Notes: generated from the letters alone by a model not told the origin. A stretch of 64,000 bases of DNA from IMGVR_UViG_3300032334_002567:317444-381443, one strand, 5' to 3'; shown: positions 1-64,000, numbered from the stretch's first letter. Numbers and translations: made by a program.

Positions 1-181
1 CGACGGCCAGCCTGCAAAGATTGTGGGTTGGAAAGAAAAGTTTCCAATCGTGAGCCAAATCGACGGCCCTCTTGCTTTTGAGTGGTCGTGGGCCGCTGTC
101 AACAGGATCATGTCCGGTGATCGACAGTTCAAGAGCTAGATCATTTGTACCCTATTAAAGCGTTCAACACCCCAACGGAGA

Positions 182-514
182 ATGATCATGGAATACACCG
201 AAGCCCTCAAAGTTCTTGGCAAGCGTGATTCGAAGAAAGTCGGAAACAACACCTACATGATCCGGCTGGGTTCGGACATCGGTATTCGACTTCACAACAC
301 CGTTGTGGTGACCATCCATCCCGACAATACCTACACACTCAATAGCGGTGGATGGCAGACAGTGACAACAAAGGATCGGATCAACCAGTATTCACCGGTT
401 CGTGTGTATCAATCAAAAAGCGTTTGGTATGTCGGTCAAGGCGAGCTGTTTTACGACAACATGAAAGTCGGTGTCGTTTGCGGTGAGCCGCTAGCTTTAG
501 GAATTGTACCCTAG
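182..514 (+). CDS. Hypothetical phage protein (GGWQTVTTKDRIN motif)
   Basis: ORF after leader with GGAG RBS; its stop TAG lies inside the next repeat. Confidence 0.8.
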   Translation: MIMEYTEALKVLGKRDSKKVGNNTYMIRLGSDIGIRLHNTVVVTIHPDNTYTLNSGGWQTVTTKDRINQYSPVRVYQSKSVWYVGQGELFYDNMKVGVVCGEPLALGIVP

Positions 515-553
515 TAGGTTGTGTAACCACCCCCAACGGAGTTGTGAAAAAAC

Positions 554-835
554 ATGATGAACTACAGCGGTTGTAACAGCTGGATCTACATCTACGCCAT
601 CGGTGGCAATTGGAACCCCGGCCCCAGCGGTGACGAGTTCGTGGGCTGTGCCTACGACGCCTCCACTGCCCTCAGCCTGCTCGACTTGGTCGAGTTGAAG
701 GGTGGCTATGCCGTCAGCCTGCACGGTGACAACCTGCATACGCTCAATGCCGTCAGCGGCGAGTGTGGTGTGCGGGAAGCCCGTATCATGTTCAAGCTCT
801 GGAAAGAGAAAGAGGCGGTCGTTGTCGCTGGGTAA
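554..835 (+). CDS. Hypothetical protein, cassette gene
   Basis: ORF fills the space between repeats at 504 and 847; GGAG RBS. Confidence 0.7.
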   Translation: MMNYSGCNSWIYIYAIGGNWNPGPSGDEFVGCAYDASTALSLLDLVELKGGYAVSLHGDNLHTLNAVSGECGVREARIMFKLWKEKEAVVVAG

Positions 836-888
836 CAATAAATAAATTGTACCCTAAAAGAGTGTTCGATCCCAACGGAGAAGCGATC

Positions 889-1032
889 ATGGAAATTAAA
901 TTCAACTTCAAAACACGTCAGTACGACGTTTGCATCACATTCTTCGACGGCAGAACCCCCATAAATGTTTGCTCTTTCTACAAAGAGTCGGATGCTCGCG
1001 CCTACGTCATGGTTCACAATGTCAAGTGTTAG
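889..1032 (+). CDS. Hypothetical 47-aa protein (MEIKFNFK...)
   Basis: ATG 889 follows CCCAACGGAG; restart within track ORF 763..1032. Confidence 0.7.
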   Translation: MEIKFNFKTRQYDVCITFFDGRTPINVCSFYKESDARAYVMVHNVKC

Positions 1033-1091
1033 ATTCAATAAATAAATTGTACCCTGACAGAGTGTTCGATCCACCCCAACGGAGTTTTGAA

Positions 1092-1244
1092 ATGACCGAA
1101 AACGAAATCAATGTTCTGGAAGAGGCCGCATCGCACATTCGAAACGATGCTTACAACTGCGATAGCAGTCTGGATCGCAAGTATTTCGAAAAGCTTGCCG
1201 ATAAGATCGAAGACATTATCGCCAAGCATAATCAAAGCAAATAA
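1092..1244 (+). CDS. Hypothetical 50-aa protein (MTENEINV...)
   Basis: ATG after leader RBS; stop abuts the next repeat. Confidence 0.75.
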   Translation: MTENEINVLEEAASHIRNDAYNCDSSLDRKYFEKLADKIEDIIAKHNQSK

Positions 1245-1293
1245 ATTGTACCCTAGATGATTGTTCGATTCACACCCCAACGGAGAAGCGATC

Positions 1294-1674
1294 ATGGCAA
1301 GCTGGTACACCGTCAGCGAGAGCAAGATTCAGTGGGCTCCCATCGGCACCCGTGTTCTGAAGACTGGCGAGACTAAGCCGAAGTTTTCCCGGATCGGCGT
1401 CCGTATCAATATGGTGGACGGTAGCTGGTGGTTCCACAGCTTCAAGCACGATAGCTGGACGCAACACTATCCCCGGAAGCAGGCCACCGACAAGCTGGGA
1501 CGGCCCATTTTCGAGGATGGTCAGCCGCTCCTGCGACCGGAACGCAAGGAAACCTACCGCAACTGGATGGCGGTTGTGAGAGAGTTCGGCACTCGACTGC
1601 CCGCTCTGGTTGTCGCTCTGGAAAACGGTCACGCCGAAGCTCTGCTAGCCGAAGCAGAGAAAACGGCAGCGTAA
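1294..1674 (+). CDS. Hypothetical protein (MASWYTVS...KTAA)
   Basis: ATG after CCCCAACGGAG; restart within track ORF 1261..1674. Confidence 0.8.
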   Translation: MASWYTVSESKIQWAPIGTRVLKTGETKPKFSRIGVRINMVDGSWWFHSFKHDSWTQHYPRKQATDKLGRPIFEDGQPLLRPERKETYRNWMAVVREFGTRLPALVVALENGHAEALLAEAEKTAA

Positions 1675-1681
1675 AACGTGT

Positions 1682-1738
1682 GCTAGGGGCGGCAAGGCTC
1701 TACGGCCAAAAGCCGCGAAACTGCTAGCCGCCCCTAGC
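1682..1738 (+). other. GC-rich hairpin without U-tract (linker type B)
   Basis: GCTAGGGGCGGC / GCCGCCCCTAGC perfect 12-bp inverted repeat. Confidence 0.8.
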
Positions 1739-1810
1739 CCGTTGGGGTACTTATAAATAATTGTACCCTAAAAGTGTGTTGCGAACGCCCCTCTTTTTCA
1801 AGGATGAAAA

Positions 1811-1981
1811 ATGTACGCTCTGACGATGATCATAGGTTTTCTTGGCTACGGGTTCGGGTACGAGGGTTGTGAAAAAGGAAAGATATATTTCGGCGTGTAT
1901 ACCCCCAAAGCCGAATATGGTTGGGTCATGACAGAAAAAGACGTTTATCTGGATACCGTGTACCAGAAAACTTCTAAATAA
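1811..1981 (+). CDS. Hypothetical 56-aa protein (MYALTMIIGFLGYGFGY...), not in ORF track
   Basis: Manually translated; AAGGA RBS; TAA abuts the repeat at 1983. Confidence 0.65.
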   Translation: MYALTMIIGFLGYGFGYEGCEKGKIYFGVYTPKAEYGWVMTEKDVYLDTVYQKTSK

Positions 1982-2022
1982 ATTGTACCCTAGTTGATTG
2001 TTCGATCCAACCCCAACGGAGA

Positions 2023-2247
2023 ATGACAATGCCAAATATCAACTGGTTCGACGGTCAGAATGCGGTTGGCAAGTACGTTATGGAACTCATGTACGACGAC
2101 GGTAGCGTCAGCTACATGAAAAATGAGAACTACGAGCAGATTTGCCACTACTACCGGCTTGCTTTGGAAATGTCGGAAGTGGTGGGTGCGACCATCTACA
2201 ACCCAAAGTGGCAAGTAGTTTGCTCGACAGCACGGGCCGCAGCGTGA
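2023..2247 (+). CDS. Hypothetical protein ending ARAAA
   Basis: ORF after leader/RBS. Confidence 0.75.
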   Translation: MTMPNINWFDGQNAVGKYVMELMYDDGSVSYMKNENYEQICHYYRLALEMSEVVGATIYNPKWQVVCSTARAAA

Positions 2248-2353
2248 ACACGGTTGCCTGGGCGGGTTGAGACAAAACTCCCCGCCCTGGCCTGTTAGGG
2301 TATTTATATTGTACCCTATAGAAGTGTCAGCCACCCCAAACACAGGAGCCAAT

Positions 2354-2515
2354 ATGAGCAATAACGAAAAACCGTACTGCTTCGAAGAAGCCCGTTTCAA
2401 GCGTGAAATGGAATACGTGGCTCGTAAGCTCAAAGAGGCGTTGGAACTCAAGGAATACGCCAAACAACTGGCAAAAGAAAAAGAACAAAAAGAGAAAGAG
2501 GAAAGCCGGGACTAA
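2354..2515 (+). CDS. Hypothetical 53-aa charged protein (MSNNEKPY...)
   Basis: AGGAG RBS before ATG 2354. Confidence 0.7.
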   Translation: MSNNEKPYCFEEARFKREMEYVARKLKEALELKEYAKQLAKEKEQKEKEESRD

Positions 2516-2535
2516 CACCCCCGGTTCTCTTTTTT
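2504..2535 (+). terminator. Rho-independent terminator (linker type A)
   Basis: GCCGGG..CCCGGT stem followed by TCTCTTTTTT. Confidence 0.7.
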
Positions 2536-2595
2536 AGTCGGCCATAGGGTACAAATAAAATAAAAAGGGATATACAATAATTGTACCCTATAACA

Positions 2596-2713
2596 GTGTG
2601 AATGATTGCGAGGCCGCACCATCGGCACTACTGTCCGGTTGCAAACGGCAGTAACTCGCGGGAGCGGTATGCCGAAAGGCAGCGAGTGGTGCACCCCATC
2701 GCAATCGTTCACA
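2596..2713 (+). ncRNA. Putative structured ncRNA (~118 nt) occupying a cassette slot
   Basis: 15-bp closing stem 2597-2611/2699-2713 (one G-U); inner stems GCACCA/TGGTGC, TACTG/CAGTA, CTCGC/GCGAG and a TGCC-GAAA-GGCA tetraloop hairpin; no RBS; flanked by repeats at 2581 and 2723. Confidence 0.7.
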
Positions 2714-2766
2714 ACAAAACAATTGTACCCTAGAAAAGTGTTCGATTCACCCCAACGGAGACGATC

Positions 2767-3102
2767 ATGACTTTCGTCAACCTGACCCCGCACACGATCA
2801 CTGTGGTTCTCGACAATACCAGCGTGCAATTCCCGGCTTCTGGCAACGTGGCCCGTGTTTCCACCAGTCGAGTCTCTGGCCCCACGCTAACCGTCTACGG
2901 CGATTCTGTCGGTATCCAGACTTCCCGTGTCGAGTTCGGGGCAGTCGAGGGGCTTCCCGATCCCGTGGACGGCACGGTTTACATTGTGAGCGGAATGGTC
3001 GCAGCCCGTGTCAACCGGCCCGACGTTTTCGCTCCCGGTGAACTGGTGCGTGATGCAAACGGCCAGCCCACCGGCTGCAAGGGTCTGACTTGCAGCGGTT
3101 GA
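2767..3102 (+). CDS. NLTPH-motif protein; possible Crn4-like ring nuclease
   Basis: Motifs NLTPH, GLPDP..G..YIVS, RPDV..PG..VRD..G...GC..L. Family link recalled, not searched. Confidence 0.55.
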   Translation: MTFVNLTPHTITVVLDNTSVQFPASGNVARVSTSRVSGPTLTVYGDSVGIQTSRVEFGAVEGLPDPVDGTVYIVSGMVAARVNRPDVFAPGELVRDANGQPTGCKGLTCSG

Positions 3103-3159
3103 TTATTATAATTGTACCCTATAGAAGTGTTCGATCCCAACCCCAACGGAGACTCACGA

Positions 3160-3600
3160 ATGAACGACATTCTTCTCGCCGCCCTGACCAGCTGCTTCAG
3201 CAAGATGGCAAAGGCCGCTGGCCCGATTGCCCCCGGCCTGCACCAGGTCGATGAAACGATCACGATGCGGGTCAAGGGCGAGGTGCTGAAGTCGGACGAC
3301 GAAACCTACGTCCCGACGATTGCGATTCCCGTCAAGGCCGTGATGGCTACGTTGCTCCCCCGGTTGGGTGCGACACGGGAGGCTGCGATGGAAACGCTTA
3401 TCGCCGCCATGACTGAAGCGGTCAATCTGGACAAGCTGGGCGATGAAACGCTCAAAGCCCGGATGAAAGACGTTGACGCGGCTTTCGAGCATGTGCAGAA
3501 CGTGCTCGACGCCCTCCCGCCAAAGACACGGACGGGAAAGACGAACGTGGACGTGACCCTTGTGGTCGCTCCCACGCCCGCCGTCGCACTTGTCCCGTGA
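3160..3600 (+). CDS. Hypothetical 146-aa protein (MNDILLAA...)
   Basis: ATG after CCCCAACGGAG; restart within track ORF 3112..3600. Confidence 0.8.
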   Translation: MNDILLAALTSCFSKMAKAAGPIAPGLHQVDETITMRVKGEVLKSDDETYVPTIAIPVKAVMATLLPRLGATREAAMETLIAAMTEAVNLDKLGDETLKARMKDVDAAFEHVQNVLDALPPKTRTGKTNVDVTLVVAPTPAVALVP

Positions 3601-3612
3601 CGATACGGCATC

Positions 3613-3644
3613 GGGGGCGGGAGGAACTAACAACTCCCGCCCCC
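3613..3644 (+). other. GC-rich hairpin (linker type B)
   Basis: GGGGGCGGGAG / CTCCCGCCCCC perfect 11-bp stem. Confidence 0.8.
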
Positions 3645-3709
3645 ACTAGCCGTTTGTGCAATTGTACCCTATTGGTTTGTGTGATTCGTCCCTTTACTTT
3701 GGAGCAGTT

Positions 3710-3892
3710 ATGGAAGCGAAAATCGAGAACGGCTTTCTGGTTCTGCGAGTCCCGATGAATGCAACGCCGATTCGTTCGTCTACCGGCAAGACTTTGGTGG
3801 TTGCCTCGACCTATGGCAACAAGGCAACCGAAGTGACGGTGGACGGCAAGACGGTCACCGTGGGCGTCAACGCCTATATCAAGGCCGCTTGA
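3710..3892 (+). CDS. Hypothetical 60-aa protein (SSTGKTLVVASTYGN motif), ends KAA
   Basis: GGAG RBS, ATG 3710. Confidence 0.8.
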   Translation: MEAKIENGFLVLRVPMNATPIRSSTGKTLVVASTYGNKATEVTVDGKTVTVGVNAYIKAA

Positions 3893-3913
3893 CCCCAACG
3901 GTTCGGATCGAAA

Positions 3914-3950
3914 GCCGGAGGGGACAGCCACCCCCTCCGGTTCTTTTTTT
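3914..3950 (+). terminator. Rho-independent terminator (linker type A)
   Basis: GCCGGAGGGG / CCCCTCCGGT stem + TCTTTTTTT. Confidence 0.85.
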
Positions 3951-4039
3951 AGCCCGCCATAGGGTACAAATAAATATATAAAATAATTGTACCCTAGATA
4001 AGTGTTCGATCTAACCTTCCCTCTCACTTGGAGTCAACG

Positions 4040-4108
4040 ATGATCGCTCTCGTTCTCGCGTTTGGCCTTGGTTTCGCCGCCATTTCTGCCGTTTACTGGG
4101 TGCTGTAA
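4040..4108 (+). CDS. 22-aa hydrophobic peptide MIALVLAFGLGFAAISAVYWVL
   Basis: Own leader repeat at 3987 and GGAG RBS; manually translated. Confidence 0.55.
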   Translation: MIALVLAFGLGFAAISAVYWVL

Positions 4109-4201
4109 AGCTCCCAGTCTAACACCTGAGTGATTAGGGTATAAAGTAATTGTACCCTAGATAAGTGTTCGATCCGATCCCACCCCAACCGGAGACGCAC
4201 G

Positions 4202-4495
4202 ATGAAGAACGCTTTCGACCGCACGAACAGCATGAAGAACAAGCTCAAGGCCGATTGGAACCGGATGGTGGGGGAACTGGTGTCCATCCCCGCCGGTTGC
4301 CAGATTCACAGCCTGACGCTCACGCAGACCAACTTCGGTTGGGTCTACGCCCGGAAGCACGGCCAGCCCGTGCCGGTCGCCCAGTTGCGGAACGCCGCCG
4401 TGACGAAGGGTTACTGTATCCTGCACGACGGCCCCAACTTCCGGGTGGCCCTCCCGCCGAAGCGGAACGGGGAGCCGGTCAAGGCCGCAGCGTGA
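4202..4495 (+). CDS. Hypothetical protein ending VKAAA
   Basis: ORF after leader/RBS. Confidence 0.8.
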   Translation: MKNAFDRTNSMKNKLKADWNRMVGELVSIPAGCQIHSLTLTQTNFGWVYARKHGQPVPVAQLRNAAVTKGYCILHDGPNFRVALPPKRNGEPVKAAA

Positions 4496-4503
4496 ACACG
4501 GTT

Positions 4504-4538
4504 GCCGGGGCGGGTCGAGACTAACTCCCCGCCCCGGC
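4504..4538 (+). other. GC-rich hairpin (linker type B), near-copy of 2256-2291
   Basis: GCCGGGGCGGG / CCCGCCCCGGC; flanks GGCCGCAGCGTGAACACGGTTGCC and TATTTATATTGTACCCTATAGAAGTGT are shared with 2235-2327. Confidence 0.8.
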
Positions 4539-4611
4539 CCCGTTGGGGTACTTGTATTTATATTGTACCCTATAGAAGTGTTCGATCCCCACCCCCAACC
4601 GGAGCCGCCCC

Positions 4612-5001
4612 ATGTTGAATGAAGCGTTCTTTCAGGTGTGCAACGATGCCGTCCCCGCAAAGTCCAGCTACGTCTCGCTCTACGTCAACGTGCCGTACTA
4701 CGGTGGGCCGGAGGAAGGTGGATGGTGGGGCAGTGACACCGCACTAGTCGCTCACTACAAGTGTGACAGCCAGCCCCATGCCGAAGCTGTGAAGGCCCGT
4801 GTCGAGGAGCTGGCCCAGCAGTTGAGCGACGATGCCCGCCGGTCGTTTGGTCAAGCCTGCAAGGCCCAGTGTGAATGGCTGGACGCACGTGGGTTGGACG
4901 CCGACTACCTGCCCGAAGTGGACGGGGAGGAAACCTACTGGGTCGCCGTCGAGGATCGCCCCGGTGAACACGCCAGCCAAGGGTGCAGGCACTACGAATA
5001 A
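4612..5001 (+). CDS. Hypothetical phage protein (YGGPEEGGWW motif)
   Basis: ORF after leader; stop abuts the repeat at 5004. Confidence 0.8.
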   Translation: MLNEAFFQVCNDAVPAKSSYVSLYVNVPYYGGPEEGGWWGSDTALVAHYKCDSQPHAEAVKARVEELAQQLSDDARRSFGQACKAQCEWLDARGLDADYLPEVDGEETYWVAVEDRPGEHASQGCRHYE

Positions 5002-5025
5002 AATTGTACCCTATCAAGCACACCG

Positions 5026-5060
5026 ACCGGAGGGGACAGCCAACCCTCCGGCTTTCTTTT
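5026..5060 (+). terminator. Rho-independent terminator (linker type A)
   Basis: CCGGAGGG / CCCTCCGG + T-tract; near-copy of 3914-3950. Confidence 0.8.
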
Positions 5061-5255
5061 CAGCCCGCCATTGGGTACAAATAAAGTAATACATAATAAT
5101 TGTACCCTAGTAATATACAGGAGGGTATTACAAAGATAATAATACAGAAATAAAAAGCGAAAACCTTTTAAAAAAATTGTACCCTAGGTACCCTCCCCCC
5201 CGCAATTACTGTCTTATTTTTTAAGTCGTCCTGACTTTTTTTCCCGTATTAGCAC

Positions 5256-5324
5256 CGTTGCAAAATCCCGGTTACAAACGTTGCAAAATCCCGGTTACAA
5301 ACGTTGCAAAATACCAGTTACAAA
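5256..5324. repeat. 3 x 23-bp tandem repeat CGTTGCAAAATCCCGGTTACAAA
   Basis: Two exact copies and one with two mismatches. Confidence 0.9.
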
Positions 5325-5636
5325 ATTTTGGCCCTAGTAATTCTTTATTTTCTCCATATGGGCTTAAGATTTTAATATTGATGACATCTTTAAAAAATCC
5401 AGCCAAAAAATTCCATAAAATTCTATTACAAATTTTGGCCCCAACAATTCTTCGTTCTATGCCGTATAAATAAATTAGGCAAAATGGAGTGCCTCTAAAA
5501 AAATGCGGCACGAAATTTTTAACGAAGGAGTGTTATGGATTATTATTCTATAAGTGGATTGGCAGTAATTACATCAATTATTTGGTTGTTTTGCTATTGT
5601 GTAAAAATAACAATGGACAATAACGAATAGACCCCC

Positions 5637-5664
5637 TAGACAAAACCTACTCTTCTGGTAAGAT
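5637..5664 (+). promoter_or_regulatory. Sigma70-type promoter TAGACA-N16-TAAGAT, extended -10
   Basis: TGG precedes the -10. Confidence 0.45.
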
Positions 5665-5739
5665 GTCCCGTAAGGAGATCACAAAGAAGTTCTCTAGGAG
5701 AAAAAATGAAAGTCAAAAGCAGGTAGTGTTCTTACTAAA

Positions 5740-5922
5740 ATGATAGCAAAACTTATTTTAGCTTTTTTGCTGATTATAACCATTCTTGTTGGTTATAGTT
5801 CTATTCAAGCTGTTGCAGAACCTACAAAAGTAGAGAAAAAAGTAGAAGACAAATCGAAATGTTTTTGTAATGGATTAAGTTTGCCCCAAGAGCGTCAGTG
5901 TCCAACAATGAACGATTTGTGA
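5740..5922 (+). CDS. Small protein with N-terminal signal/TM segment
   Basis: Hydrophobic N-terminus. Confidence 0.5.
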   Translation: MIAKLILAFLLIITILVGYSSIQAVAEPTKVEKKVEDKSKCFCNGLSLPQERQCPTMNDL

Positions 5923-5930
5923 GATTCTTC

Positions 5931-6152
5931 ATGGCATGGAATATCCCAGAAATTAAAAAATGGGCAAAGAACCATAAAATAGAAGTTAAATTAGACAAAG
6001 AGTCTAAAAAATACAGATGGACAATAGATGATAAAGTAAGTGAACTTTTATCTATAGATGATTTAGTCCCTCAGGTATTTAACTTTTTAACGGACAACAA
6101 GTACGTTCAGCATCAGGAAGAATATAGGAACAAAAAAGACACTAAATTATAA
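5931..6152 (+). CDS. Hypothetical protein (MAWNIPE...)
   Basis: Track ORF 5898..6152; ATG 5931 avoids overlap. Confidence 0.55.
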   Translation: MAWNIPEIKKWAKNHKIEVKLDKESKKYRWTIDDKVSELLSIDDLVPQVFNFLTDNKYVQHQEEYRNKKDTKL

Positions 6153-6168
6153 CATATATAAAATTGTT

Positions 6169-6711
6169 ATGTTATTTTTTAGAAGTTTTATTTGTTTTAG
6201 GTTAAATGGGAAAATAAATTCAAAAACAGTTAGTGAATTTGAAGAAATACTTTCAAATTGTTTAAAAACAAAACAAAATATACTTCCTATAGTAATAAAC
6301 TCAACAGGAGGTTGTGCTTATTCTTTAGTATCTTTATATGAAAAAATTAAAAAATCAAAAATAAAAGTAGCAACAATAGTTGAGCACAAAGCATTATCAG
6401 CAGCGGCATTTCTTCTGTCTTGTGGCAATCAAGGATACAGATATATGGCCAAAGAAGCAGTTGTTATGATACATGATGCACATTCAGCGGATTTAAAACC
6501 AGACTTAAAAGAAATAGAAAGAATTAATAGCGTATTATACAACATATTAGAAAACAACTCTAATAAAAAAAACAACTTTTTTAAGAACATAATGCAAGAC
6601 AATAAATGTTCAGATCTATATCTAAATGCTGAACAATGTCTCAAATATAAAATTATTGATTTTATTGGAATTCCTATAATTAAATCAATAATAGAAAAAG
6701 AATATTCATAG
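6169..6711 (+). CDS. clpP: ClpP-like serine protease (S14)
   Basis: INSTGG, ALSAAAFLL (Ser), MIHD (His), DLYLNAEQCLKYKIID (Asp). Confidence 0.85.
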   Translation: MLFFRSFICFRLNGKINSKTVSEFEEILSNCLKTKQNILPIVINSTGGCAYSLVSLYEKIKKSKIKVATIVEHKALSAAAFLLSCGNQGYRYMAKEAVVMIHDAHSADLKPDLKEIERINSVLYNILENNSNKKNNFFKNIMQDNKCSDLYLNAEQCLKYKIIDFIGIPIIKSIIEKEYS

Positions 6712-7398
6712 TTTTATATGGTTATTCTCTAAGAACATCTTCATTCTATCTAGTTTATTCCTCATATGACCTTCGTAATAGTTAAAATGGAATATCTTAT
6801 CTTCAGAATAGCTGGTTTTTTCGTTAGAATATAATCTAAATCTATCAGTCATGTCCTTCCAGATAATCTCTGGGTGGGAATAAAAGAACATATTGAACAT
6901 AGATTGCTCTAACTTAGGCGGATCTAAGTTCTTTTTTAGCTTTTCTTGCATATATTGGGATAACTTTAGAGCTAAATCTTTACTTAAACTAAAGAATCCA
7001 GCATTAATTCCCATATACTTTCTTTTAATTTCTATATCCCACCCCGTAGAACACCACTCGTTCAATTTTAAGCGGGTGTAGCTTTCATAGCAGTAAAGAT
7101 TGCTTTCTTTATTAAAATCCTTTTTAAACCACAACACATCGCTATCTATGTATATGAATCGGTCATAGTCTAAATTGAATATAGTTGGGCTGTATTTAAG
7201 GTCTCCAATATAATCCCAATCAGGTCTTATTTTTTCTGCTGGGGTTATTTCAGTTTCGTATTTTTCTTTTTGATCAATAGGAGCTACTATTTTGAAATTT
7301 ATATCTCCTAAATTAGCTTTTAGTGATTTATGTAGTAGTTTTGAGCATTCGAGTGCTTCGTGGTCTGGGGTGGATAATGTGTAAAATAAAATTTGCAT
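6706..7398 (-). CDS. GT-A fold glycosyltransferase (GT8-like)
   Basis: YIDSDV DxD, INAGFF, EQSMFN, FHF motifs. Confidence 0.65.
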   Translation of the reverse strand: MQILFYTLSTPDHEALECSKLLHKSLKANLGDINFKIVAPIDQKEKYETEITPAEKIRPDWDYIGDLKYSPTIFNLDYDRFIYIDSDVLWFKKDFNKESNLYCYESYTRLKLNEWCSTGWDIEIKRKYMGINAGFFSLSKDLALKLSQYMQEKLKKNLDPPKLEQSMFNMFFYSHPEIIWKDMTDRFRLYSNEKTSYSEDKIFHFNYYEGHMRNKLDRMKMFLENNHIKL

Positions 7399-7415
7399 AA
7401 AAGTATGTACTTGTT

Positions 7416-7443
7416 TTGCAATCTATTATTTTTATGATATACT
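7416..7443 (+). promoter_or_regulatory. Sigma70-type promoter TTGCAA-N16-TATACT, extended -10
   Basis: TGA precedes the -10; upstream of 7471. Confidence 0.55.
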
Positions 7444-7470
7444 GTTGTTCCTCTTTTATAAGGAACAAAT

Positions 7471-7659
7471 ATGACTCCCAGAAGAAGTAGAAAACAGGCG
7501 TTTCGGGATTATTGCGAAAAGGTGCGTATGTATTTGTCTGAGGAATGCATGGTAAATAACGTCGATGCTAAAGTGGATGATGAAGATATAGGGTTTTATT
7601 TTCGTGATAAGCACGATGTTCAGACTGCTGCTATGCTTATAAAGGAAGTTTTAGATTAA
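7471..7659 (+). CDS. Hypothetical protein
   Basis: AAGGA RBS. Confidence 0.6.
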   Translation: MTPRRSRKQAFRDYCEKVRMYLSEECMVNNVDAKVDDEDIGFYFRDKHDVQTAAMLIKEVLD

Positions 7660-8531
7660 TGTTGAAATTGGTGAGGCCAGCATATTCTGAGATATGTCTT
7701 TTAGTAAAGTCATATAATGAAATAGATTTTGAGGATTGGCTGCGTCACTATACTTCTTTAAAAGCTGATAAAATAACCATATTTGATAATGAGTCCAGTA
7801 TAAATGTTCGTAAAATAGTAAAAAAGGTAGATAATAACAGGGTAGCGGTTAGGGAGATAAAGGGATTTCCTAATCAGTCTCGTTTATATACAAATTATTG
7901 TAAGGAGAGCGATTCTAGGTGGGTTTTCTTTGTAGATGATGATGAGTTCTTGTATTTGAATAATAAAGCGAATGATATAAACAGCTTGTTGTGTAATTAT
8001 GAGAAGTATTCTGGGCTTTGTTTTAATTGGTTGTTTATGAGTTATGATAAGCCTATTGTAGATCGTCCAGTTCCGTCTTGTATAGATTATTGTTTATATT
8101 CCAGTGATAGGAAGAATAGTTTAAATAGTCATGTAAAGACCTTTGTGAATCCTAAGATGGTGCGTGGTTATGGGGATCCTCATTTGCCAGCTTTTAGGAG
8201 TGGCTTTGCAGTAAACTTTGATTATAAGCGGTGTAAACGTCCAGTTTTTGAGAGGTTTACTGATTCTGTTATATTATTTCATTATTATTTGAAGTCAAAA
8301 TTAGATTGGGAGGAGAAGCGTAAACGGGGTAGGGCCACAACTTTATCTGTTCGCATCTCAGCGTACGAGAAAATAGTTAACTTTCGTTTATGTAAGAATT
8401 TTGATACTAGGATGATGGAGTATAAGAAGAGATGGGGCCAGTTCACTCCCGATAGTTTGAATTGGCGAGATTTGTCAATTACGGGTCGTCAGAATATTGA
8501 TTCGCCTAATCCAATTAGAAAAATGATTTGA
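7659..8531 (+). CDS. Glycosyltransferase (GT2/GT92-like)
   Basis: DWLRHY, IFDNES, WVFFVDDDEFL, HVKTFVNP, LFHYYLKS. Confidence 0.75.
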   Translation: MLKLVRPAYSEICLLVKSYNEIDFEDWLRHYTSLKADKITIFDNESSINVRKIVKKVDNNRVAVREIKGFPNQSRLYTNYCKESDSRWVFFVDDDEFLYLNNKANDINSLLCNYEKYSGLCFNWLFMSYDKPIVDRPVPSCIDYCLYSSDRKNSLNSHVKTFVNPKMVRGYGDPHLPAFRSGFAVNFDYKRCKRPVFERFTDSVILFHYYLKSKLDWEEKRKRGRATTLSVRISAYEKIVNFRLCKNFDTRMMEYKKRWGQFTPDSLNWRDLSITGRQNIDSPNPIRKMI

Positions 8532-12527: not shown

Positions 12528-12996
12528 TAAAGAGCTACTGCCTTCCATTCCTGATGATCAAAAAAAGAAGGTATTCTCGTTAATAGAGGAATTTAAGAAT
12601 TTTGCTTTTAAGGGCAACGTTGTTGATCTAGCTGTGGGTATGGTTATTGGGAGTTCTTTTAGTAATATAGTAAACAGTTTAGTCAACAACCTAATTACTC
12701 CGATAATAGGTATAGTTTTACCGGGTGATGTTGGACTTAAAGATTGGCAAATAGTTGTTGGCGAAAAACGAATACCTTTTGGTGCATTCTTTAATGATGT
12801 ATTTGGATTCTTACTCACTGCGACTATTTTGTTCTTATTCTTGAAGAAGTTTTTAGTTTGGTTGTTGAAGTCTAGAAGAGAGGTGGACTTGAACAAACCT
12901 CCTCTAACTAAAGACCAAGAACTATTGCGTCAAAACAACGAAGTACTTAACCAAATAAAAGACATTTTATTGAGAAGTCAAAGTACCGGACTATAG
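12520..12996 (+). CDS. mscL: Large-conductance mechanosensitive channel
   Basis: EEFKNFAFKGNVVDLAVGMVIG, second TM, ELL..IKDIL tail; probable GTG start at 12520. Confidence 0.92.
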   Translation: MDNKELLPSIPDDQKKKVFSLIEEFKNFAFKGNVVDLAVGMVIGSSFSNIVNSLVNNLITPIIGIVLPGDVGLKDWQIVVGEKRIPFGAFFNDVFGFLLTATILFLFLKKFLVWLLKSRREVDLNKPPLTKDQELLRQNNEVLNQIKDILLRSQSTGL

Positions 12997-13889
12997 ACTG
13001 CGGCGTGTTTGACAGCATAGTTAATTACATCTTTTTTAATTTGTCTGATTCTTTCTTTGGATACATCAAAGATTTTGCCAACATCTTGTAGAGTCATGCC
13101 CTCTTCTTGGTCTATTCCAAAGTAATACTTCAAAATAGTAATTTTGGCATCGGCATTTTTCATATTGCTCCTAATAATTTCAAATACTCTTTCAACAACT
13201 TCCCTGTTATGTTTATTTTTTAATTCCACAACAGCAAAATCTTCTTTTTGTTGTTGTAAGGTTTCTGGTTCTTCTATTCCTGTGAATCGTTCTTCTAGCT
13301 TCCTATAGTTTGAGTAATCTCTATGGAGGTTTCTCTTAAGAACATTTACATAATAGGTGGAAAATTTAAAGTTGAGTCTATAATCGAAGTATTCGATAGA
13401 CTTTAACATATGCATGTATGCGTTTGAAAAGAATTCGTCTCTTTGTGGTCCATCTTGTTCAGCAAATTTACTTACTTGCTTGACGATTAATCTCATATTG
13501 GATTTAAGTAGAATGTTTCTTACTTCTTGTAGTTTGTTAATGGTATCCTCTATTTCTAAGAGGCTTTTCTCTCTAAGTCTTTCCAACTTCACGGGGGGAG
13601 ATTGCTTAGGAGATTTGTTGTCTTTTGGTTTCTCAAATCCTGTGGTTAGTTTTTTAAGTCTATATTTCAAGTAATTGTATTTGCGAAAAAGGTGGTATTC
13701 TTGTTCTTTCTTCAACAGGGGAGAACAGTTTAGAATGTTGTTATGATCGACTTTGTCATAGCAAAGATTAACATCTGCCAATAATGGCTTTCTGTTGTTG
13801 CCCTCAAAAGATTTCTCGAAGAAAAATCTATCAGGAATGCATGAAATAATCTTTTCAAGTCTTTCATTCTTGGTCATGCTTATCTCCAT
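12978..13889 (-). CDS. RNA polymerase sigma-70 family factor
   Basis: PLL..EQE, SNMRLI, FDYRLNFKFSTY, TLQDVGKIFDVSKERIRQI. Confidence 0.9.
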   Translation of the reverse strand: MEISMTKNERLEKIISCIPDRFFFEKSFEGNNRKPLLADVNLCYDKVDHNNILNCSPLLKKEQEYHLFRKYNYLKYRLKKLTTGFEKPKDNKSPKQSPPVKLERLREKSLLEIEDTINKLQEVRNILLKSNMRLIVKQVSKFAEQDGPQRDEFFSNAYMHMLKSIEYFDYRLNFKFSTYYVNVLKRNLHRDYSNYRKLEERFTGIEEPETLQQQKEDFAVVELKNKHNREVVERVFEIIRSNMKNADAKITILKYYFGIDQEEGMTLQDVGKIFDVSKERIRQIKKDVINYAVKHAAVYSPVL

Positions 13890-30580: not shown

Positions 30581-33500
30581 ATGCCAGAATTATACGACAA
30601 CCTAGGAAGAAAAATAGATGCTGCCAAAATGAGCATTGGCGAGCTAAAGGGTTTAGTCGGCACATTGATGAAGTCTAAAGTTGGACCAGCAAAACCTATT
30701 GGTGGTCAAGAAGAAGAAGCTAAAACACAAGACTCAAATCTAGAACTTATTAAATTATTTGAAGACTATGTAAAAGGATTTAACGAAGAAGTAGATGAAC
30801 AAAAGAGTTTACTTCAAAATATAGTAGATGCATTAAAAAATATTAATTCTAAAAAAGAAGAAAAAGCTAATCAACCAAAAGACAACAAAGAAGAAAAAGA
30901 TGAGATAAAAGAAACATTTCCAGAAAAATTAAGAAAAGCTCTTACTGGAAAAAACAAGCCTAGCAAAGAAGAGCATACAACTGCTAAGGCTACAAATTCT
31001 TTAGCAAATCTATTCGGGAAAAAAGGTTCTGGCTATACCCATGATATACACTGTGAGGCATGGCTAAGACAAATATATCAGGTTTTAGCTAAAGATAGAG
31101 AAGGCGTAGCAACGCCAGAAGCCGCTGCTAGGCAGGTTGAAGAAGATGTAACAAGAGTCACAGCAAGAGAACCTGCAGAAACAGCTGCAAGGGAAGCTTC
31201 TGAGGCAGCTACTACTGGAGGGGGCGAGACTATAAGAGCGAGAGATTGGCTAGATGCCGAAGAGTACTACCAAGAGTTAAACGGATTAGAAAATGATTAC
31301 TATCAACACACAGTAGATTCAATATTTGGACTATGGAACAAAGAAAAAGATTTATACGAAAGAATAACAGGCTTAGAAAAAGAAAAAAATGCAATTCACC
31401 GTGCTTATTTGAAGGAAGGCATCAGCAAAGAGGAAAAAGAAAGACTAGCTTTAGCTTACAGGCAAATGGGCATAGAAATAAGCAATCAAAAAATCATAAA
31501 AAGAAATTTAAAAGAACAAGAGAACGCTTGGAAAGAGATTGGAAAACAAATAGAGACAGCAGAAAAATATTTATTAGGTTTCAAAGGAGGCGGGGCGTTT
31601 GAGGTACTAACAAAAGGAATAATAAAAGAAGAAAGAGAATTTACACAAAATATTAGACAAGCGGCATATGAAACTGCTGGAGTCACTTCTGAGTCTAAGG
31701 CCCTGCAAAAAACATACGAAGAGATAGGCAAAACTTCTAAACTAACCGGAATGAATAGGAGTGAAACTCAAAAAGCTTATACAAAAGCATTAAGGTCAGG
31801 TGTCAAAGATCAAAAGAAAGCACTTAGTCTATCAGTATCACAACTAAACACAGAAAAACAAATAGGTGCCACAGCAGATTCTTTAGGTGAATTCTTCATA
31901 GAAATGGGCACCCAACTTCAGTTCAACAATGATCAAATGTCAGAGGTTGGAAGAGGCATAAGAGAAGCTGGTCGAAACACTGGTTTGGTAGGAGATAAAT
32001 TAGCTGGCGTTGTCAGGGGCAGTGCAGAATTTGTAAAAATGATGAAAAATGCTGGTACTGCGTCTGCATCTGCCGTGAGTAATATTGTTGGTTTACAAGC
32101 AGAGTTTACAAAGACAGGCGTAGAAGGAGGAAAGCTTCTTAAAGGACTAAGCAGTACATCTGGATTCTTAGGTAGTGATGCACAAACATTGGCTTTGATT
32201 GCTAATGCTGCTAACAGAGTTGGTCTTACTCAAGAAATGATTAATGGAACAATACTAAAAAGTTCAGCTAGCATTAAAAAGTTTAACAGAGGCTTGACTC
32301 AAACTGTCAATGACATGGGATTGGGTGGTAGAAACGCCGAAGAAATGCGAGCAAACTTTGACAAATTGTCAGATGAAGGCAGAAGAGATATCAATTTAAG
32401 ACTCAACGCAGCTTTTGGGATGGAAGCCGGTGAGTTAATGTTAGCAATAGAAGGAATCGAAAATCAATCTAAATCACTTTCTGATCGTTTGGGAGAACTT
32501 AATAAAAAGAAATCTCAAAACTTAACATTAGAAGAAAAAGCTACATTGCTTGAAGAAGAAAGAAGCTTGAAACTTGGTGCAGCAACAAAAGCTCTGACTG
32601 CAATATCTGAGGCCGCTAAGGGCACAAAAGACATGAACGAGGCCTTAGCAAAATTTAGCAGTAGAAGATCCGAATTTGAAGGCGACATGAAGGCACTCGG
32701 ACAATCCTGGACAACCGAGACAGATGTTGCTAGGGGAGCTATAAAAAGTGCTTTAGAAAATGTAAATGCTGGCTTGAAAAAAGCAGGAAAGAAAGAACTA
32801 AAAATAGACTCGTCGGAAATAGAAAAAGCAATAAAAGACCCAGCAGCATTCAGAGAACTAACGTCTCAAATAACTAAGGGAGAGCAAGAATTAGCTACTG
32901 CACAAAAAGCACAATTAGACCCATTGAGTGCAATAGAACAAAAGTTAACTGAAATAAACGACTCTGTGAGAAACTTGAGCCAAAGTTTGATATCGGGTAT
33001 TTTTAATAGTTTTCTAGGAAAAATGCTTGTGGGGATAACAGCTTTAGGAGCTTTAATTGTAGGTGCCATAGGTGGATTGAATTCAATAATCATGCCTATT
33101 TGGAACTTAATGACTCTTTTAGGAAGATCTTTATCCGGTATGGGACAAAGAACATCACAGGATAGAATGGGAAGTCTTGGGAAGGTATGGGATCGCTTAA
33201 CTGGGCGTGATACAACCCCAACCCCAGAAAGATTAACAGAAGCAGAAGTAACAGCTACCGGTAAAGATAAAACTATAACTAAAACTGGTTGCTGCGAGGA
33301 TCTTGTAAGTATAAACAAAGCAATGTTGGATGTTTTAAATGCCATTAAAGATTGTGTTTGTGGCAAACAACCAGAAGCTTCTACTCAAGCAAGTCAAACA
33401 AAACAGGAGTTAAGAGAAGCGGAACTAACACCCAAATCAGTAGTATCACCAGATCAAGTTGCAGCTGGTAAAGCAGGAGAAGTTGCCAAAAAAGAAGTAG

Positions 33501-63700: not shown

Positions 63701-64000
63701 ATATCGCCCATCAATATACCACCGATAACAATACCACCTATATCGCCCATCAACATACCACCGATAACAATACCGCCAATACCACCAATAACACCCATAA
63801 ACATACCACCGATAACAATACCACCTATATCGCCCATCAATATACCACCGATAACAATACCACCTATATCGCCCATCAACATACCACCAATAACTGTTCC
63901 ACCAATAAACGTACCACCAATAACTGTACCACCAATAAACATACCACCTGTAGAGATACCGCCCGTAACTATACCACCAATATCGCCTATTAATGTACCA
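60713..64000 (+). CDS. Virion protein with PKD-like domain and long Pro/Ile-rich repeats; truncated by window end, not in ORF track
   Basis: AAGGA RBS, GTG 60713 (MVNFFPPKPVYP...), LDFGDG; the same frame is used at 62162 and 63962. Confidence 0.8.
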   Translation, partial: MVNFFPPKPVYPKSYDSDYTLYLVYNTSETFISKKNNAWAEEIEIIPVGPKNPEIWANNGFASISGELFYYDSVEKNLPISPEVELKIGLIEVDAKGAITSIPVVDGGSGYYFPSFDVAGTGSGAVIQPVVVDGSITEIIILNGGTGYTFNSVELILVGKVFKLKRCARNLGGSATKNNQIGSEVRGFVVAEHHNQIVDVIINIEKFIGQNFDADYDTLDWRIRHLEGLPIVFDDFTCPDIQFNFYIESEDPAKGVIARYDIVITGSYNNFRLDFGDGNFTTSSVSGTHTYATGSTIDPTVVLSNSKCTIVQTPIERAASTEPENPTVATTFEIPIPQIPNIPDFVPPTVPTPPTPQIPPIVFPCLDIGPVGPVNISPLSPINIPPVTIPPVNVPPITIPPINITPINVSPINLPPISLPPTNIPPVNISPVNITPVNIPPVTIPPINIPPISPINIPPIPPVSPLSPINIPPISPINVPPIYIPPVTIPPVTIPPVTIPPVTIPPVTIPPVTIPPVTIPPVTIPPIPPISPLSPINIPPISPLSPINIPPIPPLSPINIPPISPLSPINIPPVTIPPVNIPPITIPPITIPPISPINIPPIPPVNIPPVNITPVNVPPVNIPPVNITPVNIPPINIPPVNITPVNIPPVNITPVNIPPVNITPVNIPPVNITPVNIPPVNIPPVNITPINIPPVNITPVNIPPVNITPINIPPVNITPVNIPPVNIPPINIPPINIPPIPPVSPINIPPISPLSPINIPPISPVNIPPVNITPIDIPPINIPPVNIPPIPPVSPINIPPISPLSPINIPPIPPLSPINIPPVNITPITPINIPPINVPPITIPPVYIEISPITPAYLTPIDLSPINIPPVSPINIPPIPPVSPINIPPISPINIPPVSPINIPPISPVNIPPVSPINIPPITIPPVSPINIPPITIPPINVPPITIPPVYISPITPAYLTPIDLSPINIPPISPINIPPIPPITPINIPPITIPPISPINIPPITIPPISPINIPPITIPPIPPITPINIPPITIPPISPINIPPITIPPISPINIPPITVPPINVPPITVPPINIPPVEIPPVTIPPISPINVP
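61710..64000 (+). repeat. Degenerate 15-nt coding repeats (IPPVT/IPPVN/ITPVN/ISPIN)
   Basis: ATACCACCTGT(A/G)A(C/A)T units directly visible. Confidence 0.95.

What the first reader, a model, noticed from the sequence alone, without database searches (positions are those of the whole stretch)
2767..3102. NLTPH protein: possible ring nuclease/anti-type III CRISPR cargo
Seen: 111 aa with NLTPH, LP.P..G..YIVS, R.D...P and RD..G...GC motifs. From memory this matches the Crn4 ring nuclease family, which degrades cyclic oligoadenylates and has phage-encoded members; I cannot verify this here. If right, it marks the array as an anti-defence island and makes the neighbouring unknown ORFs candidates by association.
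Basis: inference. Interest (0 to 1): 0.6.

Follow-up and report, generated by a model that had tools for sequence, protein, structure and literature searches.

The report
Jumbo-phage Crn4b-type ring nuclease gene
This small gene of a freshwater jumbo phage encodes a clear relative of Crn4, an enzyme that destroys the cyclic oligoadenylate alarm signals of bacterial type III CRISPR immunity, so it is most likely a phage counter-defence gene of a kind described in 2025.

Summary
It belongs to the Crn4 ring-nuclease family.

- **Sequence:** phmmer against PDB gives Crn4b (9r7b) at E 2.4e-16. A profile of 81 homologues gives 1.3e-21.
- **Catalytic residues:** T7, H9 and R95 align with Crn4a T13/H15/R112 and are invariant in all 81 homologues.
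- **Dimer:** a hairpin-swapped homodimer is predicted (score 0.70, best control 0.01).
- **Subtype:** it lacks the Crn4a insertion, so it is Crn4b-like.

The host record is a 381-kb, 36.5% GC virus. No Cas10 or SMODS cyclase was found in it, which favours counter-defence over self-regulation.

The 61% GC gene lies near the end of a 50-kb array of about 100 small genes. Seventy-two copies of a promoter-like element with core TGTACCCT stand in that array.

The "anti-defence island" corollary is not supported. No other array gene matched a known anti-defence family, and a 73%-identical homologue has different neighbours.

Phage-borne Crn4b homologues are already published, so this is a new member of a known kind. 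Its activity is untested.

The parts
2715..2741 (+). Promoter-like element of the Crn4 cassette. The invariant core TTGTACCCTA is at 2723-2732 and is preceded by an A/T-rich stretch.
   Evidence: It is one of 72 + strand copies of the core TGTACCCT between genome positions 272,016 and 322,621. Most copies lie 20-60 nt before an SD and start codon. Promoter function is inferred and was not shown.
2742..2766 (+). Conserved 5' leader (GTTCGAT...CCCCAACGGAG) with Shine-Dalgarno GGAG at 2757-2760.
   Evidence: Read directly from the sequence. The same leader recurs before most cassettes in the last ~10 kb of the array.
2767..3102 (+). Coding sequence of the 111-aa Crn4b-type ring nuclease (P0001). 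GC is 0.607 and GC3 is 0.67.
2785..2793 (+). Codons for T7-P8-H9. H9 (2791-2793) corresponds to the general-acid His of Crn4 (H15 in Crn4a, H17 in Crn4b).
   Evidence: Alignment to 9r7b, 9sma and the H15A mutant 9qs9. Invariant in 81 of 81 homologues. H15A abolishes activity in Crn4a (PMC12830947).
2854..2949 (+). Long beta-hairpin arm (residues 30-61) predicted to wrap around the partner subunit. It starts with the invariant R30.
   Evidence: DSSP strands 30-43 and 48-61 in the model. Residues 38-55 form the predicted dimer interface. The hairpin tip is where the 95%-identical copies differ.
2989..2994 (+). Codons for S75-G76. S75 corresponds to the cA6-contacting S91 of Crn4a. G76 replaces the adenine-stacking R92.
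   Evidence: Alignment. Column counts are S in 81 of 81; at position 76, G 49, A 16, T 6, R 4. Ligand contacts come from PMC12830947.
3049..3051 (+). Codon for R95, the equivalent of the catalytic Arg (R112 in Crn4a, R103 in Crn4b), supplied by the other subunit of the dimer.
   Evidence: Alignment. Invariant in 81 of 81. R112A abolishes activity in Crn4a.
3913..3942 (+). Strongest intrinsic-terminator-like hairpin downstream (11-bp stem followed by a T run). It probably ends the transcription unit that holds the structured RNA, the Crn4 gene, the 146-aa gene and the 60-aa gene.
   Evidence: Repeat families D6 and D10. The role is inferred.
1..5187 (+). The last 5.2 kb of the ~50.6-kb, one-strand array of small promoter-led genes in which the Crn4 cassette sits. 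GC drops from about 50-54% to about 33% just past its end.
   Evidence: The junction is also present in a second assembly that is 100% identical over 12,333 bp.

Best explanation
The ORF encodes a minimal, stand-alone Crn4b-type ring nuclease carried by an uncultured freshwater jumbo phage. Two copies form a homodimer in which each long beta-hairpin wraps around the partner. A cyclic oligoadenylate binds in the central cavity at the dimer interface. His9 of one subunit, acting as general acid and backed by Thr7, and Arg95 of the other subunit cleave the ring in a metal-independent way into short linear products with 2',3'-cyclic phosphate ends. By analogy with Crn4b, the likely substrates are cA4 and cA3 rather than cA6. 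The gene has its own phage promoter-like element, so it would be made during infection. The enzyme would then drain the cOA produced by the host's Cas10 and keep the CARF/SAVED effectors switched off, acting as an anti-type III CRISPR protein. It might also act against cA3-signalling CBASS. Shown here: homology, fold, residue conservation, predicted dimer and viral context. Inferred: catalysis, substrate range, timing of expression and the effect on host immunity.
For: - **Sequence:** E 2.4e-16 to Crn4b 9r7b, 8.8e-12 to Crn4a 9sma and 2e-10 to 9qs9. A profile of 81 homologues gives 1.3e-21, 2e-16 and 1.9e-14.
- **Catalytic residues:** T7, H9 and R95 align with T13, H15 and R112 and are invariant in 81 of 81 homologues. 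H15A and R112A kill Crn4a (PMC12830947).
- **Dimer:** predicted homodimer ipSAE 0.70 against a best control of 0.01. In the tool's calibration that mark was reached by 20 of 30 proteins solved as pairs of one chain and by 1 of 23 solved as single chains (rough here, because my own alignment was used). The runs share at least 97% of contacts and partner pLDDT is at least 90. The interface uses hairpin residues 38-55.
- **Subtype:** no Crn4a-type ~10-aa insertion.
- **Context:** virus record of 381 kb with baseplate and tail genes. No Csm1/Cmr2 Cas10 and no SMODS cyclase were found in it.
- **Retention:** 95%-identical copies sit in syntenic arrays, and a 73%-identical copy follows the same promoter motif in a relative with other neighbours.
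- **Precedent:** Crn4b homologues in phages and plasmids are proposed as anti-CRISPRs, and Crn4a relieves type III immunity in vivo.
Against: - No enzymology was possible, and no phage Crn4 has yet been tested as an anti-CRISPR.
- The host is unknown, so it is not known whether it has a type III CRISPR or cA3-CBASS system.
- There is no expression evidence: no RNA run holds the stretch, and the promoter role of the repeat is inferred.
- The Arg that stacks on adenine in Crn4a (R92, also Arg in Crn4b) is Gly76 here and is small in most of this clade. Substrate range may therefore differ from the characterised enzymes.
- The record is about 79% complete, so a phage-borne cOA system in the missing part is not excluded.
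- The dimer pass may partly reflect the model's memory of the solved Crn4 dimers.
Confidence: 0.75

Rival explanations
1. The enzyme's main target is cA3 from CBASS, or from other cA3-using systems, rather than type III CRISPR. On this reading it is an anti-CBASS nuclease comparable in effect to Acb1. This overlaps with the best explanation and is not exclusive of it.
For: Crn4a and Crn4b both cleave cA3, and the authors raise an anti-CBASS role for viral Crn4b. A Crn4 domain degrades cA3 in the TSR1 effector. Gly76 in place of the stacking Arg hints at altered ligand handling.
Against: Crn4a did not cleave the CBASS signal cAAG. The cellular members of the family are tied to type III CRISPR loci. 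The host and its defences are unknown.
Confidence: 0.3
2. The protein resets a cOA signalling system encoded by the phage itself, since some huge phages carry CRISPR-Cas. On this reading it acts as a housekeeping ring nuclease rather than a counter-defence.
For: Cellular Crn4 does exactly this inside type III-D loci. The record is only about 79% complete.
Against: No Csm1 or Cmr2 Cas10 and no SMODS cyclase were found in 381 kb, with positive controls ringing. SAVED also gave no hit, but its control rang in no genome, so that result is uninformative. The gene's neighbours are small unrelated cassettes, not cas genes.
Confidence: 0.03
3. The protein acts on another substrate: linear A-rich RNA, RNA 3' ends or a different cyclic nucleotide. 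It would then belong with the RNA and DNA repair genes of the array.
For: High concentrations of Crn4a cut a 12-nt polyA RNA. The array also holds a cREC_REC (cyclic-phosphate processing) protein and a WGR-ligase. R92 is not conserved here.
Against: The authors regard the polyA activity as slow and of doubtful relevance. The cREC gene lies about 7 kb away in a separate cassette. The catalytic residues and ligand-cavity residues S75 and R95 are conserved as in the cOA enzymes.
Confidence: 0.07
4. The protein binds cOA without cutting it (a sponge), or the gene is a silent passenger picked up from a GC-rich donor.
For: The gene's 61% GC in a 36.5% GC phage shows foreign origin. There are no expression data.
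Against: His9 and Arg95 are invariant in 81 homologues, which would not be expected of a sponge or a decaying gene. The frame is intact. It has an SD and the phage's own promoter-like element. It is retained at 95% and 73% identity in related phages, with changes concentrated in the hairpin tip.
Confidence: 0.05

Closest known systems
Crn4b (PDB 9r7b; MBK8772583, Hyphomicrobiales bacterium; PMC12830947)
   Different: The window's gene is viral and stands alone, not next to Can2 in a type III CRISPR locus. The protein is slightly shorter (111 aa against the 128-residue chain). Gly76 replaces the Arg that follows the conserved Ser. Activity is untested.
Crn4a (PDB 9sma and 9qs9; Actinomyces procaprae WP_136192672)
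   Different: Crn4a has about 10 extra residues in the hairpin, which align as two insertions against the window's protein. It is associated with Csm6-2 and CorA in type III-D loci. Identity is only 29-35%.
Phage-borne Crn4 homologues, e.g. Microcystis phage Ma-LMM01 gp061, Paenibacillus phages Unity and Scottie, Bacillus phage Mgbh1, Thermobifida phage P1312 and an Altiarchaeum virus
   Same: These have the same family and the same viral setting, at 33-40% identity over more than 90% of the query. All are annotated as hypothetical proteins. The Crn4 paper counts 11 such phages and proposes them as anti-CRISPRs.
   Different: Several carry N-terminal extensions, for example gp061 at 154 aa. 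PHROG profiles 21731 and 30542 match the window's protein only in their inner or C-terminal parts. The window's protein is the bare domain, sits in a jumbo phage, and is expressed from a promoter-per-gene cassette.
AcrIII-1 / Crn2 (DUF1874, PF08960), the viral cA4 ring nuclease
   Same: The proposed role is the same: a small viral homodimer that destroys cOA with a catalytic His acting as general acid.
   Different: The fold and family are unrelated. P0001 has no Pfam hit to PF08960, there is no PF08960 match anywhere in the phage record, and Foldseek finds only Crn4. AcrIII-1 is specific for cA4.
Acb1 (phage anti-CBASS phosphodiesterase)
   Same: A viral enzyme that degrades cyclic oligonucleotide signals including cA3.
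   Different: It is a different enzyme family with a broader nucleotide range. No homology to it was seen here.

Membership tests
Crn4 ring nuclease family | Significant sequence similarity to the characterised and solved Crn4 proteins | tested here: met
   phmmer gives E 2.4e-16 (Crn4b), 8.8e-12 (Crn4a) and 2e-10 (Crn4a H15A), with no other PDB hit up to E 10. The profile of 81 homologues gives 1.3e-21, 2e-16 and 1.9e-14.
Crn4 ring nuclease family | The Crn4 fold: paired beta strands, one short helix and an extended beta-hairpin. The authors report it as unique in the PDB. | tested here: met
Crn4 ring nuclease family | Conserved T13, H15 and R112 (Crn4a numbering); His and Arg are essential for catalysis | tested here: met
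   T7, H9 and R95 align to them and are invariant in 81 of 81 homologues. Mutant data are in PMC12830947.
Crn4 ring nuclease family | Homodimer in which each hairpin wraps around the partner, giving a composite active site | tested here: met
   Predicted only. ipSAE is 0.70 against a best control of 0.01. In calibration the mark was reached by 20 of 30 proteins solved as pairs of one chain and by 1 of 23 solved as single chains (rough, because my own alignment was used). At least 97% of contacts are shared between runs and pLDDT is at least 90. The interface residues are 38-55 with 105-109, 88 and 3. The pass may partly be model memory of the solved Crn4 dimers.
Crn4 ring nuclease family | Cleaves cyclic oligoadenylates to linear products with 2',3'-cyclic phosphate ends | not testable with these tools
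   This needs purified protein and HPLC assays with cA3, cA4 and cA6.
Crn4 ring nuclease family | Ligand-contact residues of Crn4a (side chain of S91; R92 stacking on adenine), both structurally conserved in Crn4b | tested here: inconclusive
   S75 is conserved in 81 of 81. The R92 position is Gly76 here. Across the 81 homologues it is G 49, A 16, T 6 and R 4. Most of the contacts the paper lists are main-chain, so the consequence is unclear.
Crn4b subfamily | Smaller than Crn4a, lacking the ~10-residue hairpin segment; also the form seen on phages and plasmids | tested here: met
   Crn4a aligns with two insertions totalling about 11 residues, whereas Crn4b aligns almost without gaps and scores best.
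CRISPR-associated (cellular) Crn4 | Located in a type III CRISPR locus, next to or fused with a cOA-activated effector (Csm6-2, CorA, Can2, TIR-SAVED) | tested here: not met
   The record is viral. No Csm1 or Cmr2 Cas10 was found in 381 kb, with controls ringing. The neighbours are small unrelated genes. It therefore belongs to the mobile-element-borne set, not the CRISPR-associated set.
Anti-CRISPR (type III) proteins | Virus-encoded and shown to neutralise type III CRISPR immunity during infection or in a challenge assay | not testable with these tools
   Virus-encoded is met. The functional half needs an experiment. The host and its CRISPR content are unknown.
Anti-defence island | Several recognised anti-defence genes clustered together | tested here: not met
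   A Pfam and PHROG scan of 102 array proteins found no second known anti-defence family. There is no PF08960 (AcrIII-1) match in the record. The PF13876 search, which I ran on my recollection that this Pfam family holds Acb2, also found nothing, but its control rang in no genome and is uninformative. Many array genes remain unknown, so this shows absence of evidence only.
AcrIII-1 / Crn2 (DUF1874) | Match to PF08960 and its fold | tested here: not met
   There is no Pfam hit apart from a sub-threshold BclA_C match at E 0.1. Foldseek finds only Crn4.

The most novel reading that the evidence does not exclude
The phage clade of Crn4 has a small residue where the characterised enzymes have an adenine-stacking Arg, and most members have an even shorter hairpin. 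This clade may have a substrate range of its own, for example cA3-centred action against CBASS-type signalling or other cyclic oligonucleotides. In addition, the 50-kb promoter-per-gene array may be a cassette-exchange system through which jumbo phages trade foreign, GC-rich counter-defence genes. The Crn4 cassette may travel there together with the conserved structured RNA that has its own promoter just upstream.
Probability: 0.12. Interest if true: 0.65.

Novelty: new member of a known kind. Interest (0 to 1): 0.35.

Why it matters
Ring nucleases are how viruses can silence the cyclic-oligoadenylate alarm of type III CRISPR systems. Crn4 is the newest such family, published in December 2025. 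Its phage-borne members have only been listed and none has been tested.

This gene is a compact, bare-domain Crn4b-type member with all catalytic residues. It comes from an uncultured jumbo phage and has close and more distant copies in related phages. That makes it a good candidate for a first test of a viral Crn4 as an anti-CRISPR, and possibly as an anti-CBASS enzyme.

Published work also shows that a cA3-degrading Crn4 can trigger the type II Panoptes guard system (PMC13577387). Carrying the gene may therefore have a cost to the phage that can be measured.

The finding does not open a new category. The surrounding promoter-cassette array is the more unusual feature.

Tried and rejected
- **Pfam on P0001:** only a sub-threshold BclA_C match (E 0.1, 12.9 bits against a cut-off of 38), rejected as noise. 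PHROGs gave only 'unknown function' families.
- **Selection test:** dN/dS between the window and the 95%-identical copies was not attempted. The copies differ at too few sites, and most of those lie in the hairpin tip.
- **Neighbours as candidates:**
  - Pfam and PHROG scans of ten neighbouring ORFs gave only Kyano_Gp96 for the 110-aa protein and PHROG 24642 (unknown function) for the 129-aa protein.
  - PDB sequence searches of five neighbours gave nothing below E 0.29.
  - The Atlas feature search of the 146-aa neighbour scored 0.80, which is the tool's noise level.
- **Rfam on 1-6000:** only a chance miRNA-like match at E 0.76. No tRNAs in 1-8000.
- **The search for related loci with alignment A1:** The single-protein scan of IMG/VR found only a second assembly of the same phage. 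Exact-pattern scans for the structured RNA and for the promoter plus leader found the same contig only.
- **Phage polymerase for the conserved promoter:** no T7-like match (the control rang nowhere, so this is uninformative) and no multisubunit RNAP match. Three sigma-70-type factors were found.
- **Uninformative searches:** the controls for SAVED and for PF13876 (searched as the presumed Acb2 family) rang in no genome.
- **Sequencing runs:** all holders are DNA metagenomes kept as contigs and none is RNA. Read laying was therefore not used, because it could not show expression.
- **Chimeric assembly as the cause of the GC break at about 5,100-5,200:** rejected. A second assembly is 100% identical across it, and related contigs continue into the same AT-rich genes.

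Full report
**1. Observation.** Window 2767-3102 (+) is an intact ATG-to-TGA ORF of 111 codons.
- NLTPH at residues 5-9
- LPDPVDGTVYIVS at 63-75
- RPDVFAP at 84-90
- RDANGQPTGC at 95-104

A GGAG Shine-Dalgarno sits at 2757-2760. A copy of a repeated element, with TTGTACCCTA at 2723-2732, lies 44 nt before the ATG.

**2. Identity.** Pfam has no model for the protein. PHROGs places it in two families of unknown function.

A phmmer search of all PDB sequences returns exactly three hits up to E 10, and all are Crn4:
- Crn4b 9r7b at 2.4e-16
- Crn4a 9sma at 8.8e-12
- Crn4a H15A 9qs9 at 2e-10

The word-index search found 99 homologues of similar length. A profile built from 81 of them hits the same three entries at 1.3e-21, 2e-16 and 1.9e-14.

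**3. Catalytic machinery.** The paper names T13, H15 and R112 (Crn4a) as conserved in all members. H17 and R103 are the Crn4b equivalents of H15 and R112. H15A and R112A abolish activity. His and Arg of one active site come from different subunits.

In the alignments, T7, H9 and R95 of the window's protein take these positions. They are invariant in 81 of 81 homologues, along with N5, P8, R30 and S75. S75 matches the cA6-contacting S91.

The next residue differs. It is R92 in Crn4a, where it stacks on an adenine, and Arg in Crn4b too. Here it is Gly76. Across the 81 homologues it is G in 49, A in 16, T in 6 and R in only 4. This is the one clear departure from the characterised enzymes.

Crn4a aligns with two insertions of about 11 residues in the hairpin, whereas Crn4b aligns almost without gaps. 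The protein is therefore of the Crn4b type.

A two-copy complex prediction passed its controls:
- ipSAE 0.70 against a best control of 0.01
- in the tool's calibration the mark was reached by 20 of 30 proteins solved as pairs of one chain and by 1 of 23 solved as single chains (rough here, because my own alignment was used)
- at least 97% of contacts shared between runs, pLDDT at least 90

The interface is made by hairpin residues 38-55 against residues 105-109, 88 and 3 of the partner, as in the solved Crn4 dimers. This pass may partly be model memory of those structures. It shows likeness, not binding.

**4. Where it sits.** The window is the last 64 kb of a 381,443-bp IMG/VR virus record, estimated 79% complete. 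The record has baseplate and tail genes and a tRNA nucleotidyltransferase. Its nearest relative in the phage collection is a 595-kb uncultured huge phage, at 43.6% identity for one large protein.

Run searches place near-identical DNA in metagenomes. Small shares occur in lake and freshwater metagenomes, and none of the holders is an RNA run.

GC content differs sharply between the gene and its setting:

| Region | GC |
|---|---|
| Whole genome | 36.5% |
| The array | 45% |
| Crn4 gene | 60.7% (GC3 67%) |

This points to acquisition from a GC-rich donor. Homologues at 57-60% identity sit in roughly 55% GC, phage-like contigs of up to 204 kb.

The gene lies near the end of a one-strand array spanning genome 272,016-322,621, which reaches window position ~5,187. 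The array holds about 100 small genes and 72 copies of the core TGTACCCT, with consensus AAATAATTGTACCCTA. Most copies lie 20-60 nt before an SD and start codon. Only a handful of copies occur in the other 330 kb.

No phage RNA polymerase was found, but three sigma-70-type factors were. The element is most simply read as a phage promoter, though that is inferred.

The GC break at the array's end is not an assembly artefact. A second IMG/VR assembly is 100% identical over 12,333 bp across it.

**5. Counter-defence or self-regulation?** No Csm1 or Cmr2 Cas10 and no SMODS cyclase were found in the record, with positive controls ringing. Nothing nearby resembles a cas gene or an effector. Together with the published proposal that phage and plasmid Crn4b homologues are anti-CRISPRs, this favours a counter-defence role.

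tblastn finds relatives in 21 phage records of 50,697. Examples are the Microcystis Ma-LMM01 group (gp061, annotated as hypothetical), Paenibacillus, Bacillus and Thermobifida phages, and two archaeal viruses.

Copies at 95% identity occupy syntenic arrays in other samples. Their differences are concentrated in the hairpin tip. A 73%-identical copy follows the same promoter motif in a more distant relative, with different neighbours. The gene is therefore retained as an independent cassette.

**6. Mechanism proposed.** A hairpin-swapped homodimer binds cOA in the central cavity. His9 of one subunit, acting as general acid, and Arg95 of the other cleave the ring without metal into A2>P, and into A1>P from cA3. 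By analogy with Crn4b the likely substrates are cA4 and cA3. This would lower cOA below the level that activates CARF/SAVED effectors.
- Shown here: homology, fold, conserved residues, predicted dimer and viral setting.
- Inferred: catalysis, substrate range, expression timing and effect on immunity.

A published consequence is worth noting. Crn4 expression triggers the cA3-guarded type II Panoptes system (PMC13577387), so such a gene could also be a liability for the phage.

**7. The island claim.** Pfam and PHROG scans of 102 array proteins found the following:
- MoxR-type AAA proteins with VWA and DUF2201 partners
- UvdE
- a WGR-ligase
- DUF6915
- a mycobacteriophage L5 gp82-like protein
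- cREC_REC
- HNH-like and transposase-like genes

None is a recognised anti-defence family. There is no PF08960 (AcrIII-1) match in the record. The PF13876 search, which I ran on my recollection that this Pfam family holds Acb2, also found nothing, but its control was silent and so it is uninformative.

The immediate neighbours gave no lead. These are the 146-, 60-, 97- and 129-aa proteins downstream and the 126-, 56-, 72- and 53-aa proteins upstream.

The array looks like a general accessory or early region with cassette turnover. Calling it an anti-defence island is not justified by present evidence, although most of its genes remain unknown.

**8. Verdict.** This is a Crn4-family, Crn4b-type ring nuclease on a phage. 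Phage-borne Crn4b homologues are already described, so it is a new member of a known kind. Its activity is untested and it has one notable active-site-cavity difference, Gly76.

Noticed in passing
window 1-5187 (genome G000:C1:272,016-322,621; loci L002-L004): A ~50.6-kb, single-strand array of about 100 small genes holds 72 copies of the core TGTACCCT (consensus AAATAATTGTACCCTA), most of them 20-60 nt upstream of an SD and start codon. Only a handful of copies occur elsewhere in the 381-kb genome. GC in the array is 45% against 35% for the rest. In the last ~10 kb the 5' leader (GTGTTCGATCC...CCCCAACGGAG) is conserved as well.
   Followed up: partly
window 2581-2722: One promoter-motif copy (2581-2590) is followed by a ~118-nt strongly structured stretch (2597-2713) instead of an ORF. 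The fold has a long closing stem and a three-way junction, with MFE -60.7 kcal/mol and z -5.6; none of 200 shuffles folded as well. It has no Rfam match and is single-copy in the genome. It is nearly invariant in the two related contigs and lies directly upstream of the Crn4 cassette. It is a candidate phage ncRNA.
   Followed up: partly
window 2321-2572, 3998-4140 and about 4609 versus L005 and L006: There is cassette presence/absence polymorphism between this phage and its 92-96%-identical relatives. Whole promoter-plus-gene units are replaced, inserted or missing, and the breakpoints fall at the repeated promoter, leader and terminator sequences. This suggests recombination at those repeats.
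   Followed up: partly
window 2518-2559, 3933-3974 and 5044-5085: A three-copy repeat holds the T-rich tail that follows terminator-like hairpins, followed by an inverted copy of the promoter core (TAGGGTACAA). With the next forward copy this forms a palindrome around TTGTACCCTA, which could be an operator or a recombination site.
   Followed up: no
window 4612-5001: A 129-aa protein (62% GC) matches PHROG 24642 at E 6.9e-42. At the DNA level, short stretches of it (about 70-105 nt) are 74-81% identical to hypothetical genes of Gordonia and Mycobacterium phages. That is a striking link for a 36.5% GC freshwater jumbo phage.
   Followed up: no
L004:2936-3226 (genome 312,936-313,226, about 7 kb upstream of the Crn4 gene): A 97-aa cREC_REC protein (cyclic-phosphate processing receiver domain, E 2.2e-21) occupies a cassette of its own. 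Crn4 products carry 2',3'-cyclic phosphates, but any link between the two is speculative.
   Followed up: partly
L003:9266-10399; L002:18776-19921 and L003:52-2256; L002:9830-11170; L003:13493-14410; L003:8201-8620: Larger array genes are a WGR plus ATP-dependent ligase fusion, a MoxR/CbbQ-type AAA ATPase next to a 735-aa VWA protein, a DUF2201 metallopeptidase/VWA protein, and DUF6915 (E 9e-50). L003:13493-14410 is probably the UvdE UV-endonuclease hit; I assigned it from its size and N-terminal sequence, not by a targeted scan.
   Followed up: partly
window about 5100-5200: GC steps sharply from about 50-54% to about 33% at the end of the array. A second, independent IMG/VR assembly that is 100% identical over 12,333 bp confirms the junction.
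   Followed up: yes
window 5249-5324: Just past the array there are three tandem copies of a 23-nt unit (TTACAAACGTTGCAAAATCCCGG-like).
   Followed up: no
window 30581-43795: A single ORF of 4,404 aa on the + strand lies upstream of the baseplate and tail genes.
   Followed up: no
window 60713-64000: An ORF that runs off the end of the record turns into hundreds of residues of proline-rich short repeats (PINIPPV/PVTIPP-like). This explains the GC skew of -0.67 in the last 2 kb.
   Followed up: partly
window 12978-13889 (-); also genome 162,481-162,651 and 197,871-198,020: There are three sigma-70 region-2 matches in the phage, one inside the window. No phage RNA polymerase was detected. These sigma factors are candidates for reading the array's conserved promoter element.
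   Followed up: no
window 182-514: A 110-aa protein matches Kyano_Gp96 (PF23790, E 4.1e-6), a family from T4-like cyanophages. The related contigs hold a 108-aa homologue.
   Followed up: no
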